From the NCBI GenBank assembly GCA_964106915.2, contig OZ066922.1: a stretch of DNA of 64,000 nucleotides. One strand, given 5' to 3'. Below the pieces are notes generated by a model. The model did not search any database. It had not been told where the DNA came from and worked only from the letters and a program-made list of their open reading frames with translations. Positions 16,596 through 26,922 of the stretch are shown piece after piece. Every line of letters begins with the position of its first letter. Position 1 is the first letter of the stretch. This DNA is from Podarcis gaigeae (Eukaryota). The position numbers were made by a program, and so were the translations under genes.

Positions 16596-17120
16596 CTCCA
16601 AACTCAGCATTTTATTCTGATTTGCCATTAACTTCAAAGTATTGCCTTGGTGGAGCCCAATTTACATTTATATTAGGAAATCATATCCTAAAATAGTTTT
16701 ATCTATATAGCATGTTCTCTGTTCAAACATATTGTTACCCTCAGCCATCTTGACTAATTTTTAAAAAAACCAAGCACAAGTAACGAGCACTACTGTTAGA
16801 GCTCCCTCCAGTACCCATTATAAAACGTGCATTATTCAAGTTGTAGAGGAAGAATTTTAATCTGTCAGCTTCGAGTTTCTGAAAGTCAAACTTTCACTGA
16901 AATGAAAACACTGCTTAAATGTGAACAATAGGAAAAACTGTGGGGTTTTTTGCCTTTAATTCTCAAGTTCTCAATCTGGAGTATTATTGCTATAATTAAA
17001 ATTGTTTTTGTTAACAAGATGTTTTGGAAATATGCTGCATAGCAGTGGCTTTTGCAGTTCTTGAAGGCAACAGAACATGCACGTACAGGTCTTGGGAACA
17101 TGCCATTTGTGTTTCAAATA

Positions 17121-17362
17121 CAGTGGTACCTTGGGTTAAGTACTTAATTCGTTCTGGAGGTCCGTTCTTAACCTGAAACTGTTCTTAACCTGAAGCACCA
17201 CTTTAGCTAATGGGGCCTCCCACTGCCGCCGCACTGCCAGAGCACGATTTCTGTTCTCATCCTGAAGCAAAGTTCTTAACCTGAAGCACTATTTCTAGGT
17301 TAGCGGAGTCTGTAACCTGAATCATATATAACCTGAAGCATATGTAACCCGAGGTACCACTG
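17121..17362 (+). mobile_element. Tc1/mariner (pogo/Tigger-like) MITE, family A
   Basis: TIR cagtggtacct..ggtta / taacc..aggtaccactg; TA on both sides. Confidence 0.9.
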
Positions 17363-17830
17363 TACGTTAAGTGACTTTAGCCCTAAGTTACCATAAGTAT
17401 TCTAGACCCTTTCTGCATTGATGCTCAAATTATTTTCACTGGGGGAAGAGTTTACATTCTGAATGGCAACCGTCCTCTGAAGACCCAGGCAGACCAGTGG
17501 GTGTCTCTTGTCTGTCTCAGGTGTTCCCTGCAGGCTTGCATGGGTGAGACAGCTGCCAAATATTGCCATGTCCACCATTGCTGCTTGTCTGAATGCAAAG
17601 ATGGGCAGGCTGGAAGGAGGACACAGTGACGGCTGGGAGCTCCCATCATGAAAACAATCTCTTTCACGCAAGCCTGCAGAGACCACCTGCAGCAGCTAGT
17701 CACCTGCTGGTCTGCCTGCGTCTTTCTCTTCACAGTAGGGTATCTTAGAAAGAGGATGTAAATATTGATTTAAAGCTTAAAAACAATGCCTCACTTGAAG
17801 GCACTTGAATAAATGCACTTCAAAACCTAT

Positions 17831-18227
17831 TGTGATGGGATAATGAGCTGCTTGTGCGTAAAAGCTTGATCCCGCTGGGGTTTGGCCGGTCATCCAAACC
17901 CAGGCACTAACGGAGCCCCCAAAAGCATGACTCCGTCAGTCGCTGGTAGAATCTGACAGTGGGCGTCTACGGAACTTACGCCAACATAAAAGCTGTTTGA
18001 CGGACATGCGCTTTCGTGACTCTCTGCGTGACAGTTTCCGGCGAAGGGAGGGAATTCCTAAAGGGGGTCTAGTTACCTCTTCACTATTCTCACTAGAAGC
18101 GTCTGAGAGCCTCCCCTCCGCTGTAACTCCTGCACTCCCCCTGCTGGTTCCTGCTTCTGCTGCAGAGTCTCTCCTACTCTGCTGGAGCCTGTCCAGCACC
18201 TCTAACTCCGATGGCAGTTCCCTGACA
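17831..18227 (-). repeat. 3' LTR (397 bp)
   Basis: Direct repeat of 22919-23315; preceded by cctat; adjacent to the polypurine tract. Confidence 0.97.
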
Positions 18228-21200
18228 TCCACCTCCCCCCCAGGCCCCCCTTCACCCCCTCCCGCCTCCTCTCCCACTGGCGGTGAGGGCGGAAAGCCCC
18301 TGAAAGAGCAATCCTCGTCATCAGAGGATTCAAACACTTCTAGCCACGGCGTCCCATCTCTCTCCCCGTCTTCTTCTTCTTCGTCGGAGGCAGCTTCCTC
18401 ACCCACCCCTGACTCTGGGAACCCTTCAAACTCTCCCTCCTCATCGGTGGTCCCAAAGTGTTCCCTTCTAAATCGTGCCACGGGTTGCGGTTTTCTTGGG
18501 AAACGCTGATGAAATGTTTCTATTAAGATCTCGTCATTCACTACCTCTGCTGGCACCCAAGTGTTTTCCGACTCTACTTCCCCCTCCCATTCTACCAGAT
18601 ATTCCACCTGATTCCCCTTCCACCTGGAATCAATGATTCCTGCCACGTTCATGTCGCGCTCTCTCTCTTCTATCACGAGCGTTTGGGTGGCCTCTCTCTC
18701 ACGCTCCCCCCACTCACGTCCCTCTCGGTACGGCGACAGTAATGACCTGTGAAATACTGGGTGTAATTTCATGTGACTGGGCAGTCTGAGTTTGAATGCT
18801 ACTGGGTTGACCTGCTGTATGACCTCAAAGGGTCCCAATTTCTTGGGTCTCAATTTCTTACTCCCACCCTTGAACGGTAGTCCTTGGGTGGACAACCACA
18901 CTCGGTCTCCCACCCTTATGATTTCACCTTCCCTCCTATTTCTGTCTGCTTGCTTCTTATATTCTTCCTTGGCTCTCTCTAAGTTAAGTTGAAGCTGACG
19001 GTGGATCGCTTCCATCTCTTCAAAAAAATGTTCCGCTGCCGGCACGCTCCATCTCTCCCCCCCCTCTCCTGGGAATGCCCGGGGATGGCACCCATAGTTT
19101 GCCAGGAAAGGACTCATCCCTGTGGACACATTCTCCGCGTTGTTGTAGGCAAATTCGGCCAGCGGTAGCTTATCTACCCAATCATTTTCTCTGTCCTTTA
19201 CATAACACCTCAGGTATTGTTGCAAAATGCCGTTTGCCCTTTCCGCTTGCCCATTAGTTTCTGGGTGTCGGGCAGTGGAGAAATTGAGTTCTACTTGCAG
19301 TAAGCTCATAAGTTTCCTCCAGAACCTGGAAGTAAATTGTTTGCCTCTGTCACTGACCACCCTCAAGGGGGCGCCATGCAACCTGAAAATATGCTCTACA
19401 AACAACTTGGCGGTCTCCTCCGCTGTAACCGCATGTGAACAGGCTATAAAATGACACATTTTGGTTAATAGATCTACCACCACCATAACAGCTGTTTTGC
19501 CTTTGGATTTTGGCAGGTCCGTCATAAAATCTATGGATACTGCCTCCCAAGGCCTTTCTGGCGTGGGTAAGGGTTGTAATAGCCCCGCTGGCGCCACCCT
19601 CTCTCCTTTTGCTCGCTGACACCTGTCGCAACCCCTAACATATTCCCGCACGTCCTCCCTCACCTTGGGCCACCAAAACTCCCTGGTAACCAACCACATG
19701 GTTTTGTGCTGTCCAAAATGTCCCGCTGTGGGGCTGTCATGCAACTGCTTGAGTACTCTGCCCCTCAGTTCCCCATCTGGTATGTACAGTGCCCCTTTGT
19801 AATACAACGCCCCGTTCTTTTCTTCAAATCCCCCTGTGTTCTCTTCTGTCCTCCTGAGTTCTCTGAGTTTCTCTTGGGCGTATTCATCGTTCTCCGTACC
19901 TTCCATCAGTTCCCTTTGCCCCACCAATGCCGCCCCACACACCCAGCGGTCTTCGGAGATTACATGCCTTGCCTCAGGCGCTCCCTCCCCCTCTAAGTAC
20001 TCAGGTTTCCTGGAAAGGGCATCCGCTCTCACGTTCTCTGAACCTGGCACGTAACGAATCTCAAAGTGGAATTTGGAGAACTCCTGGGCCCATCGCACTT
20101 GTCTCTGGTTCAGGACACGGGCTGTTCTCCAATATTCCAGATTTTTGTGGTCAGTTCGGACTTGAACCTTGTGTTGCGCCCCAATCAGCAAGTGCCGCCA
20201 TTTCCGAAATGCTTCATGAATGGCGAGCAGTTCTCTGTCGTACACTGTGTAGTTCCTCTCGGATTTGTTCAATTTCCGCGAAAAGAATGCACACGGTCTC
20301 CATTCCGACGTATCCTTTCCCGGCTGGAGAAGCACGGCCCCCACTGCTCGGTCTGACGCGTCAGTCTCCACTCTCATTGGTTGTTGTAGATCCACGTGCA
20401 GAAGCTGTTCTTCCGACGCAAACGCCTGCTTTAGGCGTTCGAACGCCCGCTGCGCTTCTTCCGTCCAAACAAATTTCTTTTTGCTACTAAGACAATCTGT
20501 GATGGGCGCGGTCAAATGGGCAAAGTTTTTGATGAACTTCCTATAGAAGTTTCCGAACCCCAGGAACCTTTGCACGTCCTTCTTGGTCTTTGGTGTTTTC
20601 CATTCCAGTACCGCTTGAACCTTGCTGGGATCCATGGCCAATCCCTTGTCAGACAACCGGTACCCCAGGAATTCCACCTCCCTAGTATGAAACTGACACT
20701 TCTCCAGTTTCACCCACAGCCGGTTTTCTCGCAGTTTGCTCAGTACCTCTCTTACATCTCGCACATGCTGCTCCTCATTCTCTGAGTACACCAGGACGTC
20801 ATCTAAGAACGCTACGCAGTTCTTGTAGAGCAATGGCCCCAGGACGTGATTCATGAATGATTGAAAACAGGCGGAGCCTCCTTGTAATCCGAAAGGCATA
20901 ACGAGGTACTCAAACGCCCCCAAGGGGGTGAACATAGTGGTCTTCCACTCATCCCCCTTCCTCACACGTATCAAGTTATATGCCCCCCTAAGGTCCAGCT
21001 TGGTAAAAATCTTCCCTTTTCTCACCTGTGTCAGAATGTCATCAATTCTAGGCATAGGGAAAGTCACTGGTTCTGACACTGCATTCAGGGACCTGAAATC
21101 ACACACAAGTCTGGGCTTGCCCGTGTGTTTTTTGTCCACAAAGAACACTGGACTGCCCCCCACCGCTCGTGACTCTCTGATGAAACCTCTCTTGAGATTC

Positions 21201-21862
21201 TTGTCAATGAACTCCCTTAACTCCTGCATCTCACTGTCTGACATTGCATACAGCTTCCCCACTGGCAATTGTGCTCCTGGGAGTAAGGTAATTTGACAGT
21301 CAAAGGGTCTGTGCGGGGGCAATTTATCCGCTTCCTTTTCGCTGAATACGTCAATCAAGTCAGCGTATTGTGGTGGCACCTTCCCCTTGTCCATCACTTC
21401 CACCCCTGCTAGAGTGGTCCTGCTGCCTGCCTGGGCCTCTCCCTCCTTGCAGTGTTCTAGGCAATGTGCTGATCCAAAGGAAACCACGCGCTGATGCCAG
21501 CCTACTAGCGGATCATGTAGTGCCAGCCAGCTCATTCCCAAGATAATAGGGGCTCCTCCCAGGGTGGCTACGTTAAACGCTATCAGTTCTGTGTGCCGTG
21601 CCACCCTCATTATCATTGGTACAGTCTGTTGGCTCACTTCTCCTCCCAACAGCTCCCTCCCATCAATCGTGGTAACCTGCAAAGGCTTACTTAATGGGAT
21701 AGTCTGTATCTGGTGCTCAGCTGCAAACTCCTTACTCATGAAATTACATGAGCTACCTGAGTCCAATAGCGCTCTTATCTTTAGTGGGTGTCCGTTTGCC
21801 AGTTCCAGCAACACCTCTATCACAAGTGCTGGTCTTGGGGGTTCCGGCGTGGGCACATTCAC
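17936..21862 (-). CDS. pol: Pol polyprotein (protease, RT, RNase H, integrase, GPY/F, chromodomain, acidic/basic tail); probably expressed as Gag-Pol by -1 frameshift
   Basis: Protease LLDSGS (21755-21763); RT MPFGL and FLDD (20798-20809); RNase H TDASD/RELLA/TDHKNL/ADALSR; integrase HHCC and D-D-E (SIDF, SDRG, QAER); LGPFEV; YLVEW..NTW chromodomain. No ATG start; the frame is open upstream to 21931 and is -1 relative to gag. Confidence 0.97.
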   Translation of the reverse strand: MNVPTPEPPRPALVIEVLLELANGHPLKIRALLDSGSSCNFMSKEFAAEHQIQTIPLSKPLQVTTIDGRELLGGEVSQQTVPMIMRVARHTELIAFNVATLGGAPIILGMSWLALHDPLVGWHQRVVSFGSAHCLEHCKEGEAQAGSRTTLAGVEVMDKGKVPPQYADLIDVFSEKEADKLPPHRPFDCQITLLPGAQLPVGKLYAMSDSEMQELREFIDKNLKRGFIRESRAVGGSPVFFVDKKHTGKPRLVCDFRSLNAVSEPVTFPMPRIDDILTQVRKGKIFTKLDLRGAYNLIRVRKGDEWKTTMFTPLGAFEYLVMPFGLQGGSACFQSFMNHVLGPLLYKNCVAFLDDVLVYSENEEQHVRDVREVLSKLRENRLWVKLEKCQFHTREVEFLGYRLSDKGLAMDPSKVQAVLEWKTPKTKKDVQRFLGFGNFYRKFIKNFAHLTAPITDCLSSKKKFVWTEEAQRAFERLKQAFASEEQLLHVDLQQPMRVETDASDRAVGAVLLQPGKDTSEWRPCAFFSRKLNKSERNYTVYDRELLAIHEAFRKWRHLLIGAQHKVQVRTDHKNLEYWRTARVLNQRQVRWAQEFSKFHFEIRYVPGSENVRADALSRKPEYLEGEGAPEARHVISEDRWVCGAALVGQRELMEGTENDEYAQEKLRELRRTEENTGGFEEKNGALYYKGALYIPDGELRGRVLKQLHDSPTAGHFGQHKTMWLVTREFWWPKVREDVREYVRGCDRCQRAKGERVAPAGLLQPLPTPERPWEAVSIDFMTDLPKSKGKTAVMVVVDLLTKMCHFIACSHAVTAEETAKLFVEHIFRLHGAPLRVVSDRGKQFTSRFWRKLMSLLQVELNFSTARHPETNGQAERANGILQQYLRCYVKDRENDWVDKLPLAEFAYNNAENVSTGMSPFLANYGCHPRAFPGEGGERWSVPAAEHFFEEMEAIHRQLQLNLERAKEEYKKQADRNRREGEIIRVGDRVWLSTQGLPFKGGSKKLRPKKLGPFEVIQQVNPVAFKLRLPSHMKLHPVFHRSLLSPYREGREWGEREREATQTLVIEERERDMNVAGIIDSRWKGNQVEYLVEWEGEVESENTWVPAEVVNDEILIETFHQRFPRKPQPVARFRREHFGTTDEEGEFEGFPESGVGEEAASDEEEEDGERDGTPWLEVFESSDDEDCSFRGFPPSPPVGEEAGGGEGGPGGEVDVRELPSELEVLDRLQQSRRDSAAEAGTSRGSAGVTAEGRLSDASSENSEEVTRPPLGIPSLRRKLSRRESRKRMSVKQLLCWRKFRRRPLSDSTSD
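18228..18241 (-). other. Polypurine tract (plus-strand primer)
   Basis: GGGGGGGAGGTGGA immediately before the TG of the 3' LTR on the minus strand. Confidence 0.85.
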
Positions 21863-21919
21863 TACTCCCTGGCCTGGCTGCTGTGCCCTGATGTTGGCAA
21901 CCAGGCGTTGGCTTTTACT
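21851..21919 (-). promoter_or_regulatory. gag-pol -1 frameshift signal with H-type pseudoknot
   Basis: S1 GCCTGGTTGC/GCAGCCAGGC (10 bp, one GU) and S2 GGGCACA/TGTGCCC (7 bp), 6 nt downstream of A_GTA_AAA, within the gag/pol overlap. Confidence 0.7.
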
Positions 21920-22872
21920 TGCTCCTTCATTTCATCCTCCTCCTTCCCCCCAACAGTTCCTGCCATCCCTTGCCATTCCTTCCTTTGCGGACAGACTCTG
22001 GCAAAGTGACCTGGCTGTTGGCAGAGATAGCATCTCTTGCCGCTCTTTCCCTCCTTCTTCCGCCCTTCACTGGTGTTTGAAACTGTGCGCGCGCGCGCTG
22101 CTCCAAGTTCCATCGGCTCTGCTGGCGGGAAAGGCTGCTCCGGAATCTCTGGAATGCGGAAGTCCTTCCAACGTTCCCCCTTTCCTTCCCGCTTTTCCAA
22201 AGCTCTAGCCTCCTGGCGTGCTCCTATGGACAGCGCTGATTTAGTCAGCTGGTCCATAGACTCCGCCCTAGGCGCCCGGGAAAGTTCATCTTTCACTGCC
22301 GGAGAGAGACCTTCTTCAAATAGCATTTGAATAGGTTCACTAGCAAGGTTCCACCCCAGTCTATGAATCAGCATGGTGAACTCAGTCCAGTACTCACGTA
22401 CAGATCGGCTCCCCTGTTTACAAGCCATCAACTCCCTGCGCACCATCCCCTGCTCAATCTCGCTGGAAAACATCAAGTCCATGGCGCGAAAAAACTTCAT
22501 TGTGTCCTTTAAGATTTCATTATTGGCTGCCATCAGGGGGCGAACCCAGTCCCTCGCCCCTCCCTCTAGATGGCCAATCACGTACGCCACTCTAGAGTTC
22601 TCATCGGGGAAGTCATCAAACAGTAGATTGAGAGCATATTGCATCTCTGTTCTAAAGGCTTGATAGTTCCTGGGATTCCCCCCAAATTTCTGCACCAATC
22701 CAGGCACCCTTCTGGCAAGTGGGGTGGTTTTCCCCTTATCTGCATCTTGAGCCCTCCTCTCCTCCAGCCTCGCCGTTTGCAGTGCGAGCTGGACCTCCAA
22801 CGCCCTGTACCTTTCTTCCAGGCTTGGATCTGCTCCAGCTCCAGCTGCCCCGGTTCCTGCTGGTTCACTCAT
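21862..22872 (-). CDS. gag: Gag (336 aa from the first ATG): N-terminal coiled coil, retrotransposon capsid, CCHC zinc knuckle
   Basis: The ORF track starts at GTG 22890; the first ATG is 22872. Motifs KFGGNP, KQGSRSVREY, EPMELG and CYLCQQPGHFARVC (CX2CX4HX4C), as in Sushi/PEG10-like Gags. Confidence 0.95.
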   Translation of the reverse strand: MSEPAGTGAAGAGADPSLEERYRALEVQLALQTARLEERRAQDADKGKTTPLARRVPGLVQKFGGNPRNYQAFRTEMQYALNLLFDDFPDENSRVAYVIGHLEGGARDWVRPLMAANNEILKDTMKFFRAMDLMFSSEIEQGMVRRELMACKQGSRSVREYWTEFTMLIHRLGWNLASEPIQMLFEEGLSPAVKDELSRAPRAESMDQLTKSALSIGARQEARALEKREGKGERWKDFRIPEIPEQPFPPAEPMELGAARARTVSNTSEGRKKEGKSGKRCYLCQQPGHFARVCPQRKEWQGMAGTVGGKEEDEMKEQVKANAWLPTSGHSSQARE

Positions 22873-22905
22873 GATGCCCTCTGCTTGCACAAACAGCTTT
22901 CGGAG

Positions 22906-22918: not shown

Positions 22919-23315
22919 TGTGATGGGATAATGAGCTGCTTGTGCGTAAAAGCTTGATCCCGCTGGGGTTTGGCCGGTCATCCAAACCCAGGCACTAACG
23001 GAGCCCCCAAAAGCATGACTCCGTCAGTCGCTGGTAGAATCTGACAGTGGGCGTCTACGGAACTTACGCCAACATAAAAGCTGTTTGACGGACATGCGCT
23101 TTCGTGACTCTCTGCGTGACAGTTTCCGGCGAAGGGAGGGAATTCCTAAAGGGGGTCTAGTTACCTCTTCACTATTCTCACTAGAAGCGTCTGAGAGCCT
23201 CCCCTCCGCTGTAACTCCTGCACTCCCCCTGCTGGTTCCTGCTTCTGCTGCAGAGTCTCTCCTACTCTGCTGGAGCCTGTCCAGCACCTCTAACTCCGAT
23301 GGCAGTTCCCTGACA
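22919..23315 (-). repeat. 5' LTR (397 bp)
   Basis: tgtgatggga...ccctgaca on the + strand; no mismatch to 17831-18227 found by eye; followed by the TSD cctat. Confidence 0.97.
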
Positions 23316-23600
23316 CCTATTCATAGCAAGAATTAAGAAATTATTCTGAGACATTTTTAATTATTTAGAACCGTCTGTGTTCATGCCAATTTAGCTCTCA
23401 AATAGCAGCTCCTACGTGAAGACATTACAGCAATCGACAATATGTTTGTGCAAATGTTTTGATATGTCCTCCCCTTTTCTTTCAGCAAGAGAGTTACCTG
23501 GAATGTGCGATTGCTTTTATGCCTTTCGTGCATAAAAACGATACCTTGGTGCACACACTATAATGGAGTGAAATTTTAAGCAAATAATGAGGCTCCAGTC

Positions 23601-25934: not shown

Positions 25935-26696
25935 CTCTAACCCTTTGGGTCACCTTTAAAGGTGAATCTACCTAATTCTCACTTTCTGAAACACTATGAA
26001 AACCGAACTATAGCCATTATTGTAACAATAATGGGTGACAGCATCTTAGCACATTATTTTTTTTAACTTGTAGTCTAGCACTTTCTTGACACATTCTTGT
26101 GAAAGGCACCGGCTTAGTCACTGTCCAGACAACTGCTTAATGAATAGTGTCATCCTAAAGCTCTTCTGTAGTTTTGTACGATCAGACTGCGATGAAGGGT
26201 GCAATGCACTGCGTCTCCTGACAGCCACTGCTCAGCAATAATCCTTGGATCCACAGCTGGAGAGGACAAACACATTGCAGAACTAACAGCTGGACTCTAG
26301 TATTCAAAACACCATATACAGGTCCAGGGTGCAGTTTATCCTGGTGGTGTGGCTGTCATGGGAACCCTGATTGTATCCACCATGAACAGGTAAAGTGAGA
26401 AAACCTGGACCACAGATGAACCCTTCTTGAGCATTACTCATGTGAAGTGGGCAAGCATGGTGAACTGAACAGGAGGAAGGGGGACTAATGTGGAAGGAGC
26501 TCCTATGTGCTCTGGAGGTTGTCATGTTACTGCTGAAGTTACTGCGGCAGGATCAGTGCTGAGGTGGCTCCCACACTGCCTATATAGTGGCACTACTGGC
26601 CCATAATCTGTGGCTGGAACTGAAATATTTATGGGTGTAGCACCATAGCACAGAGAAGCTTTGTCCATCCTAAATTTGCCTTAACAACTGGCAATA

Positions 26697-26922
26697 CAGT
26701 GGTATCTTGGGTTAAGAACTTAATTCGTTCTCGAGGTCCGTTCTTAACCTGAAACTGTTCTTAACCTGAGGTACCACTTTAGCTAATGGGGTCTCCTCCT
26801 GCTGCTGCACTGCTGCCGCACGATTTCTGTTCTCATCCTGAAGCAAAGTTCTTAACCCGAGGTACTATTTCTGGGTTAGCGGAGTCTGTAACCTGAAGCG
26901 TCTGTAACTCGAGGTACCACTG
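26697..26922 (+). mobile_element. Tc1/mariner MITE, family A
   Basis: Same TIRs and body; TA TSD. Confidence 0.9.

What the first reader, a model, noticed from the sequence alone, without database searches (positions are those of the whole stretch)
18293..18460. Integrase tail carries two tandem FxGF acidic motifs mimicking host LEDGF-IBD/TND-binding motifs: candidate new integration-tethering system
Seen: right after the chromodomain, Pol has HFGTTDEEGEFEGF (18419-18460) and WLEVFESSDDEDCSFRGF (18293-18346). Both have an upstream F, an S/T-acidic linker with CK2-type S/T-x-x-E/D sites, then FxGF. Known: this is the architecture of IBM/TIM motifs through which JPO2/CDCA7L, PogZ, IWS1 and MLL1 bind the LEDGF/HRP2 integrase-binding domain and other TFIIS-N-terminal domains. 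From memory (please verify): JPO2 DIFNAPSDDEEFVGF, IWS1 DIFGESGDEEEEEFTGF, PogZ LFEGESETESFYGF. HIV integrase binds LEDGF through its catalytic core instead, while Ty1, Ty5 and MLV integrases use short C-terminal peptides for tethering. Inference: this lizard Gypsy integrase docks on LEDGF/HRP2 or Pol II elongation factors by linear-motif mimicry, possibly phospho-regulated, and so targets transcribed H3K36me chromatin. I am not aware of this being described for an LTR retrotransposon.
Basis: partly seen in the sequence, partly recalled or inferred. Interest (0 to 1): 0.92.

Follow-up and report, generated by a model that had tools for sequence, protein, structure and literature searches.

The report
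LEDGF-binding-like motifs in retrotransposon integrase tail
A young, intact lizard Gypsy retrotransposon carries, in the disordered tail of its integrase, two conserved short motifs that look like the peptides host proteins use to dock on the chromatin reader LEDGF; this suggests, without showing it, a new way for a retrotransposon to choose where it inserts.

Summary
Pol (window 17939-21862, minus strand, 1308 aa) belongs to an intact Ty3/Gypsy element with 397-bp LTRs that are 100% identical and a CCTAT target-site duplication. After the chromodomain it has two motifs built as hydrophobic-F, then an 8-9 residue S/T-acidic linker, then FxGF (aa 1128-1148 and 1172-1190).

- **Not chance:** none of 200,000 shuffles of the tail gives two such motifs.
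- **Conserved:** the anchor F, G and F are kept across lacertid relatives whose inter-motif linker is only 22-39% identical.
- **Protein-level selection:** the anchors are kept through synonymous codon changes.
- **Second family:** an Anolis Gypsy family with no chromodomain has one very similar motif.
- **Controls:** about 110 other Gypsy tails have none.
- **PDB:** profile and peptide searches of the whole PDB return the JPO2/CDCA7L motifs fused to the LEDGF IBD as top or near-top hits, with marginal E-values.
- **Structure:** AlphaFold2 predicts a disordered tail. The chromodomain's aromatic cage is eroded.

Binding to LEDGF/HRP2, or to any TND, could not be tested, because no TND sequence could be given by reference. 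Tethering therefore remains an inference. No paper in the library links FxGF/TIM motifs to a retrotransposon. First readers noted the same motif on other DNA of this genome.

The parts
17831..18227 (-). 3' LTR (397 bp, TG...CA). It also encodes the last ~97 codons of Pol.
   Evidence: 100% identical to 22919-23315. LTR ends and flanks read.
22919..23315 (-). 5' LTR
   Evidence: A CCTAT target-site duplication lies at 17826-17830 and 23316-23320.
21865..22890 (-). gag (342 aa: Retrotrans_gag/Ty3 capsid plus a CCHC knuckle)
17939..21862 (-). pol (1308 aa, uninterrupted: PR, RT, RNase H, IN zinc domain, IN core, SH3, chromodomain, tail)
18503..18646 (-). Chromodomain (aa 1073-1120) with an eroded aromatic cage. 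Cage positions read M / W / E where sister families have Y / W / Y.
   Evidence: Pfam PF00385, E 9.3e-9. Compared with P0160 and P0161. Confidently folded in the AF2 model.
18419..18481 (-). TIM/IBM-like motif 1 (aa 1128-1148): predicted helix ending in F1136, linker GTTDEEGE, then FEGF
   Evidence: F72, T75, G83 and F84 of alignment A3 are the only columns after the chromodomain that are at least 90% conserved.
18347..18418 (-). Acidic, poorly conserved linker between the motifs (aa 1149-1172)
   Evidence: 22-39% identity to Podarcis relatives, against 76-86% for motif 1. pLDDT below 50.
18293..18346 (-). TIM/IBM-like motif 2 (aa 1173-1190): WLEVF, linker ESSDDEDCS, then FRGF
   Evidence: Upstream F, G and final F are invariant in 16 motif instances.
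18228..18290 (-). Purine-rich tract directly upstream of the 3' LTR (presumed polypurine tract). It is read as the Gly/Glu-rich stretch of Pol.
   Evidence: Sequence. This stretch is invariant among relatives, as expected for a cis-acting DNA element.

Best explanation
The two motifs are functional short linear motifs of the TND-interacting / LEDGF integrase-binding-motif type. They sit in the disordered C-terminal tail of the integrase of an active squamate Gypsy lineage. The most likely mechanism has four parts. (1) Each motif docks on the IBD-type TFIIS-N-terminal domain of the host H3K36me2/3 readers LEDGF/p75 or HRP2: the helix F goes into pocket 1, the acidic and probably CK2-phosphorylated linker lies on the basic patch, and FxGF goes into pocket 2. 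(2) Two motifs per integrase, in a multimeric intasome, give avidity. (3) The intasome is thereby tethered to transcribed chromatin. (4) This replaces the methyl-lysine reading that the eroded chromodomain can no longer do. Shown here: the motifs exist, they are under protein-level purifying selection, they lie in a disordered region, and known LEDGF-binding motifs are what they most resemble. Inferred: the partner, the phospho-regulation and the effect on integration targeting.
For: Architecture matches the published TIM definition, including linker length and the FxGF that is essential for all known LEDGF/HRP2 partners. Upstream F, G and final F are invariant in 16 instances from the window, Podarcis, Anolis and two unnamed assemblies. 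Motifs are islands of conservation: motif 1 is 76-86% identical to Podarcis relatives and the inter-motif linker 22-39%, while the integrase is 89-95% identical. Anchor codons differ synonymously between the window, L002 and L001 at 6 of 8 anchors for window against L002, with no replacement. About 110 other Gypsy tails have no such motif, and all carriers fall in one squamate clade. A second family in Anolis, which lacks the chromodomain, has LRDIFAAPSDEESFEGF. The motif profile against 177,635 PDB sequences gives one hit, 6emo_A, the LEDGF IBD-JPO2 M1 fusion, aligned on the JPO2 motif. The Anolis peptide alone gives the same top hit at E 0.045. The Podarcis P0062 peptide has the LEDGF-CDCA7L fusion 5yi9_A as top hit, aligned on JPO2 M2. 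The tail is predicted disordered, with a helix ending at the upstream F. The chromodomain cage is eroded in the carrier clade. Common variants among thousands of family fragments in three organisms are synonymous or lie in the linker, within the partial list shown.
Against: No binding test of any kind was possible. All PDB matches are marginal (E 0.045 to 2.3), and the window's own motif 2 alone finds nothing at E up to 10. The lacertid-only profile places the LEDGF fusion only third, among non-significant hits. In some Podarcis relatives the first F of motif 1's FxGF is L or M. The P0155/157/158 family has a weakly acidic S/T linker. It is unknown whether the tail stays on mature integrase. 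There are no insertion-site data. A short acidic-aromatic motif could serve another partner.
Confidence: 0.5

Rival explanations
1. The motifs are true TIMs, but they act on another TND protein (IWS1, TFIIS, Elongin A, MED26 or PNUTS). Alternatively they serve a purpose other than site choice, such as recruiting elongation factors, nuclear retention, or stabilising the integrase.
For: TIMs as a class bind several TNDs, and selectivity depends on details of the helix and on charge. The helix part here is short and variable.
Against: According to the review, FxGF is optional for other TNDs but essential for all known LEDGF/HRP2 partners. The nearest solved matches are LEDGF-bound JPO2 motifs. 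The position at the integrase C-terminus is where known tethering peptides sit (own knowledge: MLV, Ty1, Ty5).
Confidence: 0.2
2. The motifs are conserved for a reason unrelated to TNDs. Candidates are a protease processing site, an intramolecular contact with the eroded chromodomain or SH3, integrase multimerisation, or a different host partner for acidic-aromatic peptides.
For: Conservation alone does not name the partner. The same F...F.GF spacing occurs inside the folded RT domain of many Gypsy Pols (CEF...EFLGF), so the pattern is not unique to TIMs. A Numb peptide also matches SFRGFP.
Against: The full three-part pattern in a disordered region, its presence twice, its recurrence in a second family without the chromodomain, and repeated top PDB matches to LEDGF-binding motifs are not explained by this view.
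Confidence: 0.22
3. This is chance low-complexity sequence, or conservation imposed by a cis-acting DNA element near the polypurine tract and LTR.
For: The tail overlaps the polypurine tract and U3, where invariance is plausibly at the DNA level.
Against: 0 of 200,000 shuffles reproduce the pair. The anchors are kept through synonymous changes. The motifs lie 66-250 nt upstream of the LTR, separated by a fast-evolving linker. An unalignable Anolis tail has the same motif.
Confidence: 0.03

Closest known systems
JPO2/CDCA7L integrase-binding motifs M1 and M2 (PDB 6EMO, 5YI9), bound to the LEDGF/p75 IBD
   Same: Two tandem motifs with the pattern hydrophobic-F, S/T-acidic linker, FxGF. The Anolis element's KRLRDIFAAPSDEESFEGFT aligns with JPO2 KEVADIFNAPSDDEEFVGFR, and Podarcis LQEIFEETDSEEEEFIGF aligns with JPO2 LRRIFIEDTDSETEDFAGF.
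   Different: The motifs are carried by a retrotransposon integrase rather than a host transcription regulator. The similarity is short and statistically marginal. Binding is untested. Whether they arose by convergence or by capture of host sequence is unknown.
Lentiviral integrase-LEDGF/p75 tethering (HIV-1)
   Same: The proposed host partner (IBD of LEDGF/HRP2) and the proposed outcome (integration into transcribed chromatin) are the same.
   Different: HIV-1 integrase binds the IBD through its folded catalytic-core dimer interface (own knowledge; review), not through a linear FxGF motif in a disordered tail.
C-terminal tethering peptides of MLV integrase (BET ET domain), Ty1 integrase (AC40) and Ty5 integrase (Sir4)
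   Same: A short peptide in the disordered integrase C-terminus is used as a host-factor handle. Ty5's handle is phospho-regulated (own knowledge; the Ty1 case is in PMC7459421, listed).
   Different: The motif class and the presumed partner are different. None of these uses a TND or IBD.
Chromoviruses (Ty3/Gypsy with a chromodomain that reads methylated H3)
   Same: The Pol architecture is the same, and a Pfam-detectable chromodomain follows the SH3. The element nests among such elements in the integrase tree.
   Different: Two of the three aromatic cage residues are lost in this clade, and the whole domain is lost in the Anolis family. The FxGF motifs are an addition not seen in about 110 other tails.
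JIL-1 kinase DFxGFDE motif bound by the LEDGF domain of Drosophila JASPer/P75
   Same: An acidic FxGF motif in a disordered C-terminal region docks on an IBD-type domain of an H3K36me3 reader, which shows the interaction mode is conserved across animals.
   Different: This is a host kinase, not a mobile element.

Membership tests
TND-interacting motif / LEDGF integrase-binding motif (TIM/IBM) | Lies in an intrinsically disordered region | tested here: met
   In the AF2 model made with alignment A3, the chromodomain has pLDDT 88-94 and the tail 41-55.
TND-interacting motif / LEDGF integrase-binding motif (TIM/IBM) | Short helix carrying a conserved F/V/L/I anchor upstream of the linker | tested here: met
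   The upstream F is invariant in 16 instances and is usually preceded by V/I/M or an aromatic residue. A predicted helix at aa 1128-1136 ends at F1136, and there is a helical turn at 1175-1177, both at low confidence.
TND-interacting motif / LEDGF integrase-binding motif (TIM/IBM) | Flexible acidic linker of 8-16 residues rich in D/E, G, S/T | tested here: met
   The linkers are GTTDEEGE (8 residues) and ESSDDEDCS (9 residues).
TND-interacting motif / LEDGF integrase-binding motif (TIM/IBM) | FxGF (essential for all known LEDGF/HRP2 partners) | tested here: met
   FEGF and FRGF are present. G and the last F are invariant. The first F is L or M in motif 1 of three Podarcis relatives.
TND-interacting motif / LEDGF integrase-binding motif (TIM/IBM) | CK2 phosphorylation of linker S/T that raises affinity | not testable with these tools
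   Only the consensus S/T-x-x-D/E is present (T1138, T1139, S1179, S1180). The S/T pair after the F is conserved; T75 in A3 is at least 90% conserved.
TND-interacting motif / LEDGF integrase-binding motif (TIM/IBM) | Physical binding to a TND/IBD | not testable with these tools
   No TND or IBD sequence could be supplied to complex prediction by reference.
Chromovirus (chromodomain-bearing Ty3/Gypsy) | Chromodomain at the integrase C-terminus | tested here: met
   PF00385, E 9.3e-9, aa 1073-1120.
Chromovirus (chromodomain-bearing Ty3/Gypsy) | Three-residue aromatic cage for methyl-lysine (group I type) | tested here: not met
   Cage positions read M / W / E, against Y / W / Y in sister families P0160 and P0161 and most other tails.
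Active LTR retrotransposon | Identical LTRs, target-site duplication, open gag and pol | tested here: met
   Transcription was not shown, because no RNA run holds the sequence.

The most novel reading that the evidence does not exclude
A squamate lineage of Gypsy retrotransposons gave up chromodomain-based chromatin reading. Once or twice independently, it acquired linear-motif mimics of host LEDGF/HRP2-binding peptides in the integrase tail. It would thus arrive by a different interface at the same H3K36me3-reader tether that lentiviruses use. The tandem pair resembles the two JPO2/CDCA7L motifs, so capture of host coding sequence is not excluded.
Probability: 0.42. Interest if true: 0.88.

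Novelty: new variant of a known kind. Interest (0 to 1): 0.76.

Why it matters
Integration-site choice by tethering is known for lentiviruses (LEDGF), gammaretroviruses (BET) and yeast Ty elements. No vertebrate LTR retrotransposon has a defined tether, and no mobile element is known to use a TIM/IBM linear motif.

If the inference holds, this would be:
- a case of convergent use of the LEDGF/HRP2 hub through a completely different interface;
- a natural example of motif mimicry in the TND interactome;
- an evolutionary swap of targeting modules, from chromodomain to linear motif, in one clade.

It would also predict gene-body insertion of an apparently active, high-copy lizard element, which bears on squamate genome evolution. 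The hypothesis can be tested directly with peptides and recombinant domains.

Tried and rejected
- **PDB, whole tail:** a search with aa 1125-1200 found nothing at E up to 10.
- **PDB, window motif 2 alone:** nothing.
- **PDB, lacertid-only profile:** only non-significant hits. The top one was a Numb peptide sharing SFRGFP, judged chance because its upstream context differs.
- **ESM Atlas feature search of the tail:** only unnamed clusters at 0.76-0.77, which is uninformative.
- **Search for more relatives of the Anolis tail:** only the two clusters already known.
- **RNA evidence:** no run on record as RNA holds the element, so expression is neither shown nor excluded.
- **Pfam on ORFs flanking the insertion:** nothing, so the genomic context of this copy (genic or not) is undetermined.
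- **Primary papers:** Sharma 2018 and Cermakova 2021 are not held. The review PMC9987994 was used instead.
- **SUMO-interaction motif and gamma-ear (FGxF) readings:** considered and rejected on pattern grounds from my own knowledge. There are only two hydrophobic residues before the acidic run, and the G follows x rather than F.
- **Single against double origin of the motif:** the careful tree separates the Anolis family from the lacertid clade, but an AU test does not reject one clade (p 0.164). This is left open.

Full report
**What is there**

The finding lies in the 3' part of the pol gene of a complete Ty3/Gypsy LTR retrotransposon on the minus strand.
- The LTRs (17831-18227 and 22919-23315) are 397 bp, start TG and end CA, and are 100% identical. 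They are flanked by a CCTAT target-site duplication.
- gag (21865-22890) and pol (17939-21862, 1308 aa) are open.
- Pfam finds protease, RT, RNase H, integrase zinc domain, integrase core, the Tf2-type SH3 and a chromodomain at aa 1073-1120.
- The tail after the chromodomain reads through a purine-rich tract and about 97 codons of the 3' LTR.
- By these criteria this is a very young insertion.

**The observation**

Taking in the upstream hydrophobic residues, the two units are:
- ARFRREHF, then GTTDEEGE, then FEGF;
- WLEVF, then ESSDDEDCS, then FRGF.

Six of the eight phenylalanines in the 184-residue tail are motif anchors. Shuffling the tail gives two F.GF in 4 of 10,000 trials. It gives two complete units (upstream F, acidic linker, F.GF) in none of 200,000 trials.

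**Conservation**

- *Close relatives.* Three Podarcis muralis Pols (P0001-P0003) are 89-95% identical in the integrase but only 60-68% identical over the chromodomain and tail. Motif 1 is 76-86% identical and motif 2 is 58-63% identical with invariant anchors, while the linker between them is only 22-39% identical.
- *More distant members.* An exhaustive HMMER search with the chromodomain plus tail found further members: P0004, P0006, P0008, P0062 and P0068. Three of these are from Podarcis and two are from unnamed assemblies. All keep units of the same form.
- *Sister family.* The Podarcis family P0155/157/158 is 54-59% identical in the integrase. It has a more degenerate chromodomain followed by FFDDWLF, then TPTLSAST, then FQGF.
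- *Twelve-tail alignment.* The only columns after the chromodomain that are at least 90% conserved are the F, T, G and F of motif 1.
- *Sixteen motif instances.* Aligning them gives invariant upstream F, G and final F.
- *Codons.* Between the window and the natural DNA of two relatives (L002, L001), the anchor codons differ synonymously. For the window against L002 this holds at 6 of 8 anchors, with no replacement. The constraint therefore acts on the protein, not on a DNA element.
- *Family fragments.* Contigs from runs of three coded organisms hold thousands of fragments of the family. The common variants listed in the motif region are synonymous or fall in the linker, though that list is partial.

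**Distribution**

About 110 other Gypsy Pols retrieved with the integrase have no such unit in their tails, and nearly all of those with a recognisable chromodomain keep the Y/W/Y cage. They come from amphibians, fungi, algae and many unnamed assemblies.

All carriers lie in one well-supported squamate clade. Within it:
- The lacertid carriers form a clade with 100/99 support.
- A high-copy Anolis carolinensis family (P0257/P0258, clusters of 46 and 75 members) has lost the chromodomain altogether. It has a single unit, LRDIFA[AE]PSDE[ED]SFEGF.
- In the careful tree the Anolis family groups with a non-carrier (P0160), which suggests a second acquisition. An AU test does not reject a single clade (p 0.164).

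**What it resembles**

The review of the TFIIS N-terminal domain defines TND-interacting motifs as follows (PMC9987994):
- a short helix anchored by F/V/L/I;
- a flexible 8-16 residue acidic linker rich in G/S/T, often phosphorylated by CK2;
- an optional FxGF that is essential for all known partners of the LEDGF and HRP2 domains.

Each feature that sequence can show is met here.

As an unbiased check, I searched all 177,635 distinct PDB sequences.

| Query | Result | E-value |
|---|---|---|
| 16-instance motif profile (A2) | single hit, 6emo_A (LEDGF IBD-JPO2 M1 fusion), aligned on DIFNAPSDDEEFVGF | 0.15 |
| Anolis peptide alone | same chain, top hit | 0.045 |
| Podarcis P0062 peptide | 5yi9_A (LEDGF-CDCA7L fusion), top hit, aligned on JPO2 M2 | 1.3 |
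| Lacertid-only profile (A4) | 5yi9_A is third | 2.3 |
| Window's motif 2 alone | nothing | up to 10 |

Individually these matches are marginal. That such chains come back repeatedly as top or near-top hits is unlikely by chance.

AF2 with the family alignment folds the chromodomain confidently and leaves the tail disordered. It predicts a helix ending at the upstream F of motif 1.

**Mechanism**

The best-supported reading is that these are functional TIM/IBM-type motifs. The most likely role is docking of the integrase on the IBD of LEDGF/p75 or HRP2, which would tether integration to transcribed, H3K36-methylated chromatin. Two motifs per integrase, in a multimeric intasome, would add avidity.

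The chromodomain has lost two of its three cage residues in the carrier clade, and the whole domain is gone in Anolis. This fits a change of targeting module.

The partner, the phospho-switch and the effect on site choice are all inferences. I could not run a co-fold, because no TND sequence is available by reference here. Rivals are set out in the Rival explanations section:
- another TND, or a purpose other than targeting;
- a partner unrelated to TNDs, or an intramolecular role;
- chance or DNA-level constraint, which is largely excluded.

**Novelty**

Searches of the paper library found no description of such a motif in a mobile-element integrase. The search terms were FxGF, TND-interacting motif with transposable element, chromovirus with H3K36me3 or tether, and LEDGF with retrotransposon. 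The ten papers holding 'FxGF' (nine listed) concern host proteins or unrelated topics.

Tethering by C-terminal integrase peptides is known, and LEDGF as a tether is known. The combination is new, so I rate this a new variant of a known kind.

First readers of this scan noted the same motif on other pieces of this genome. Those notes are unchecked and are not independent evidence.

**Limits**

- There are no binding data, no insertion-site data and no RNA evidence.
- The host species of L001 and L002 are unknown.
- Only natural copies were aligned.

Noticed in passing
window 17939-18290 (minus strand): Pol reads through the purine-rich tract and about 97 codons of the 3' LTR. The basic C-terminal end (RRKLSRRESRKR...LLCWRKFRRRPLSD) is conserved at protein level in P0001, P0002, P0004 and, more loosely, P0068. 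U3 therefore does double duty as coding sequence, and the basic end may be a nuclear-localisation or nucleosome-contact element.
   Followed up: partly
P0160 (Podarcis muralis sister family), C-terminal tail, seen: A sister family without FxGF has an intact Y/W/Y chromodomain and an acidic tail ending in PRRSARLKAR. This resembles the HMGN nucleosome-binding core RRSARLSA (own knowledge). Different chromatin-contact motifs may be evolving in the tails of this squamate clade. A first-reader note (s1-692063) saw the same thing elsewhere in the genome.
   Followed up: partly
window 18503-18646 (minus strand): The chromodomain cage positions read M / W / E instead of Y / W / Y. In the P0155/157/158 family even the W is replaced (AREG/AKEG).
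   Followed up: yes
window 21862 (minus strand): The gag stop codon and the first pol codon share base 21862, and pol is in a different frame. Pol expression therefore presumably needs a ribosomal frameshift at the gag-pol junction.
   Followed up: no
P0156 and P0184: NCBI gene models named vomeronasal type-2 receptor 26-like (Podarcis) and protein-glutamine gamma-glutamyltransferase E-like (Pelodytes) contain Gypsy integrase domains. These are probably chimeric annotations of insertions in or next to host genes.
   Followed up: no
window 17117-17332 and 26693-26908: A 216-bp direct repeat, 90% identical, brackets the element at a spacing of 9.6 kb. It may be an older repeat family or a solo LTR pair into which the Gypsy element inserted.
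   Followed up: no
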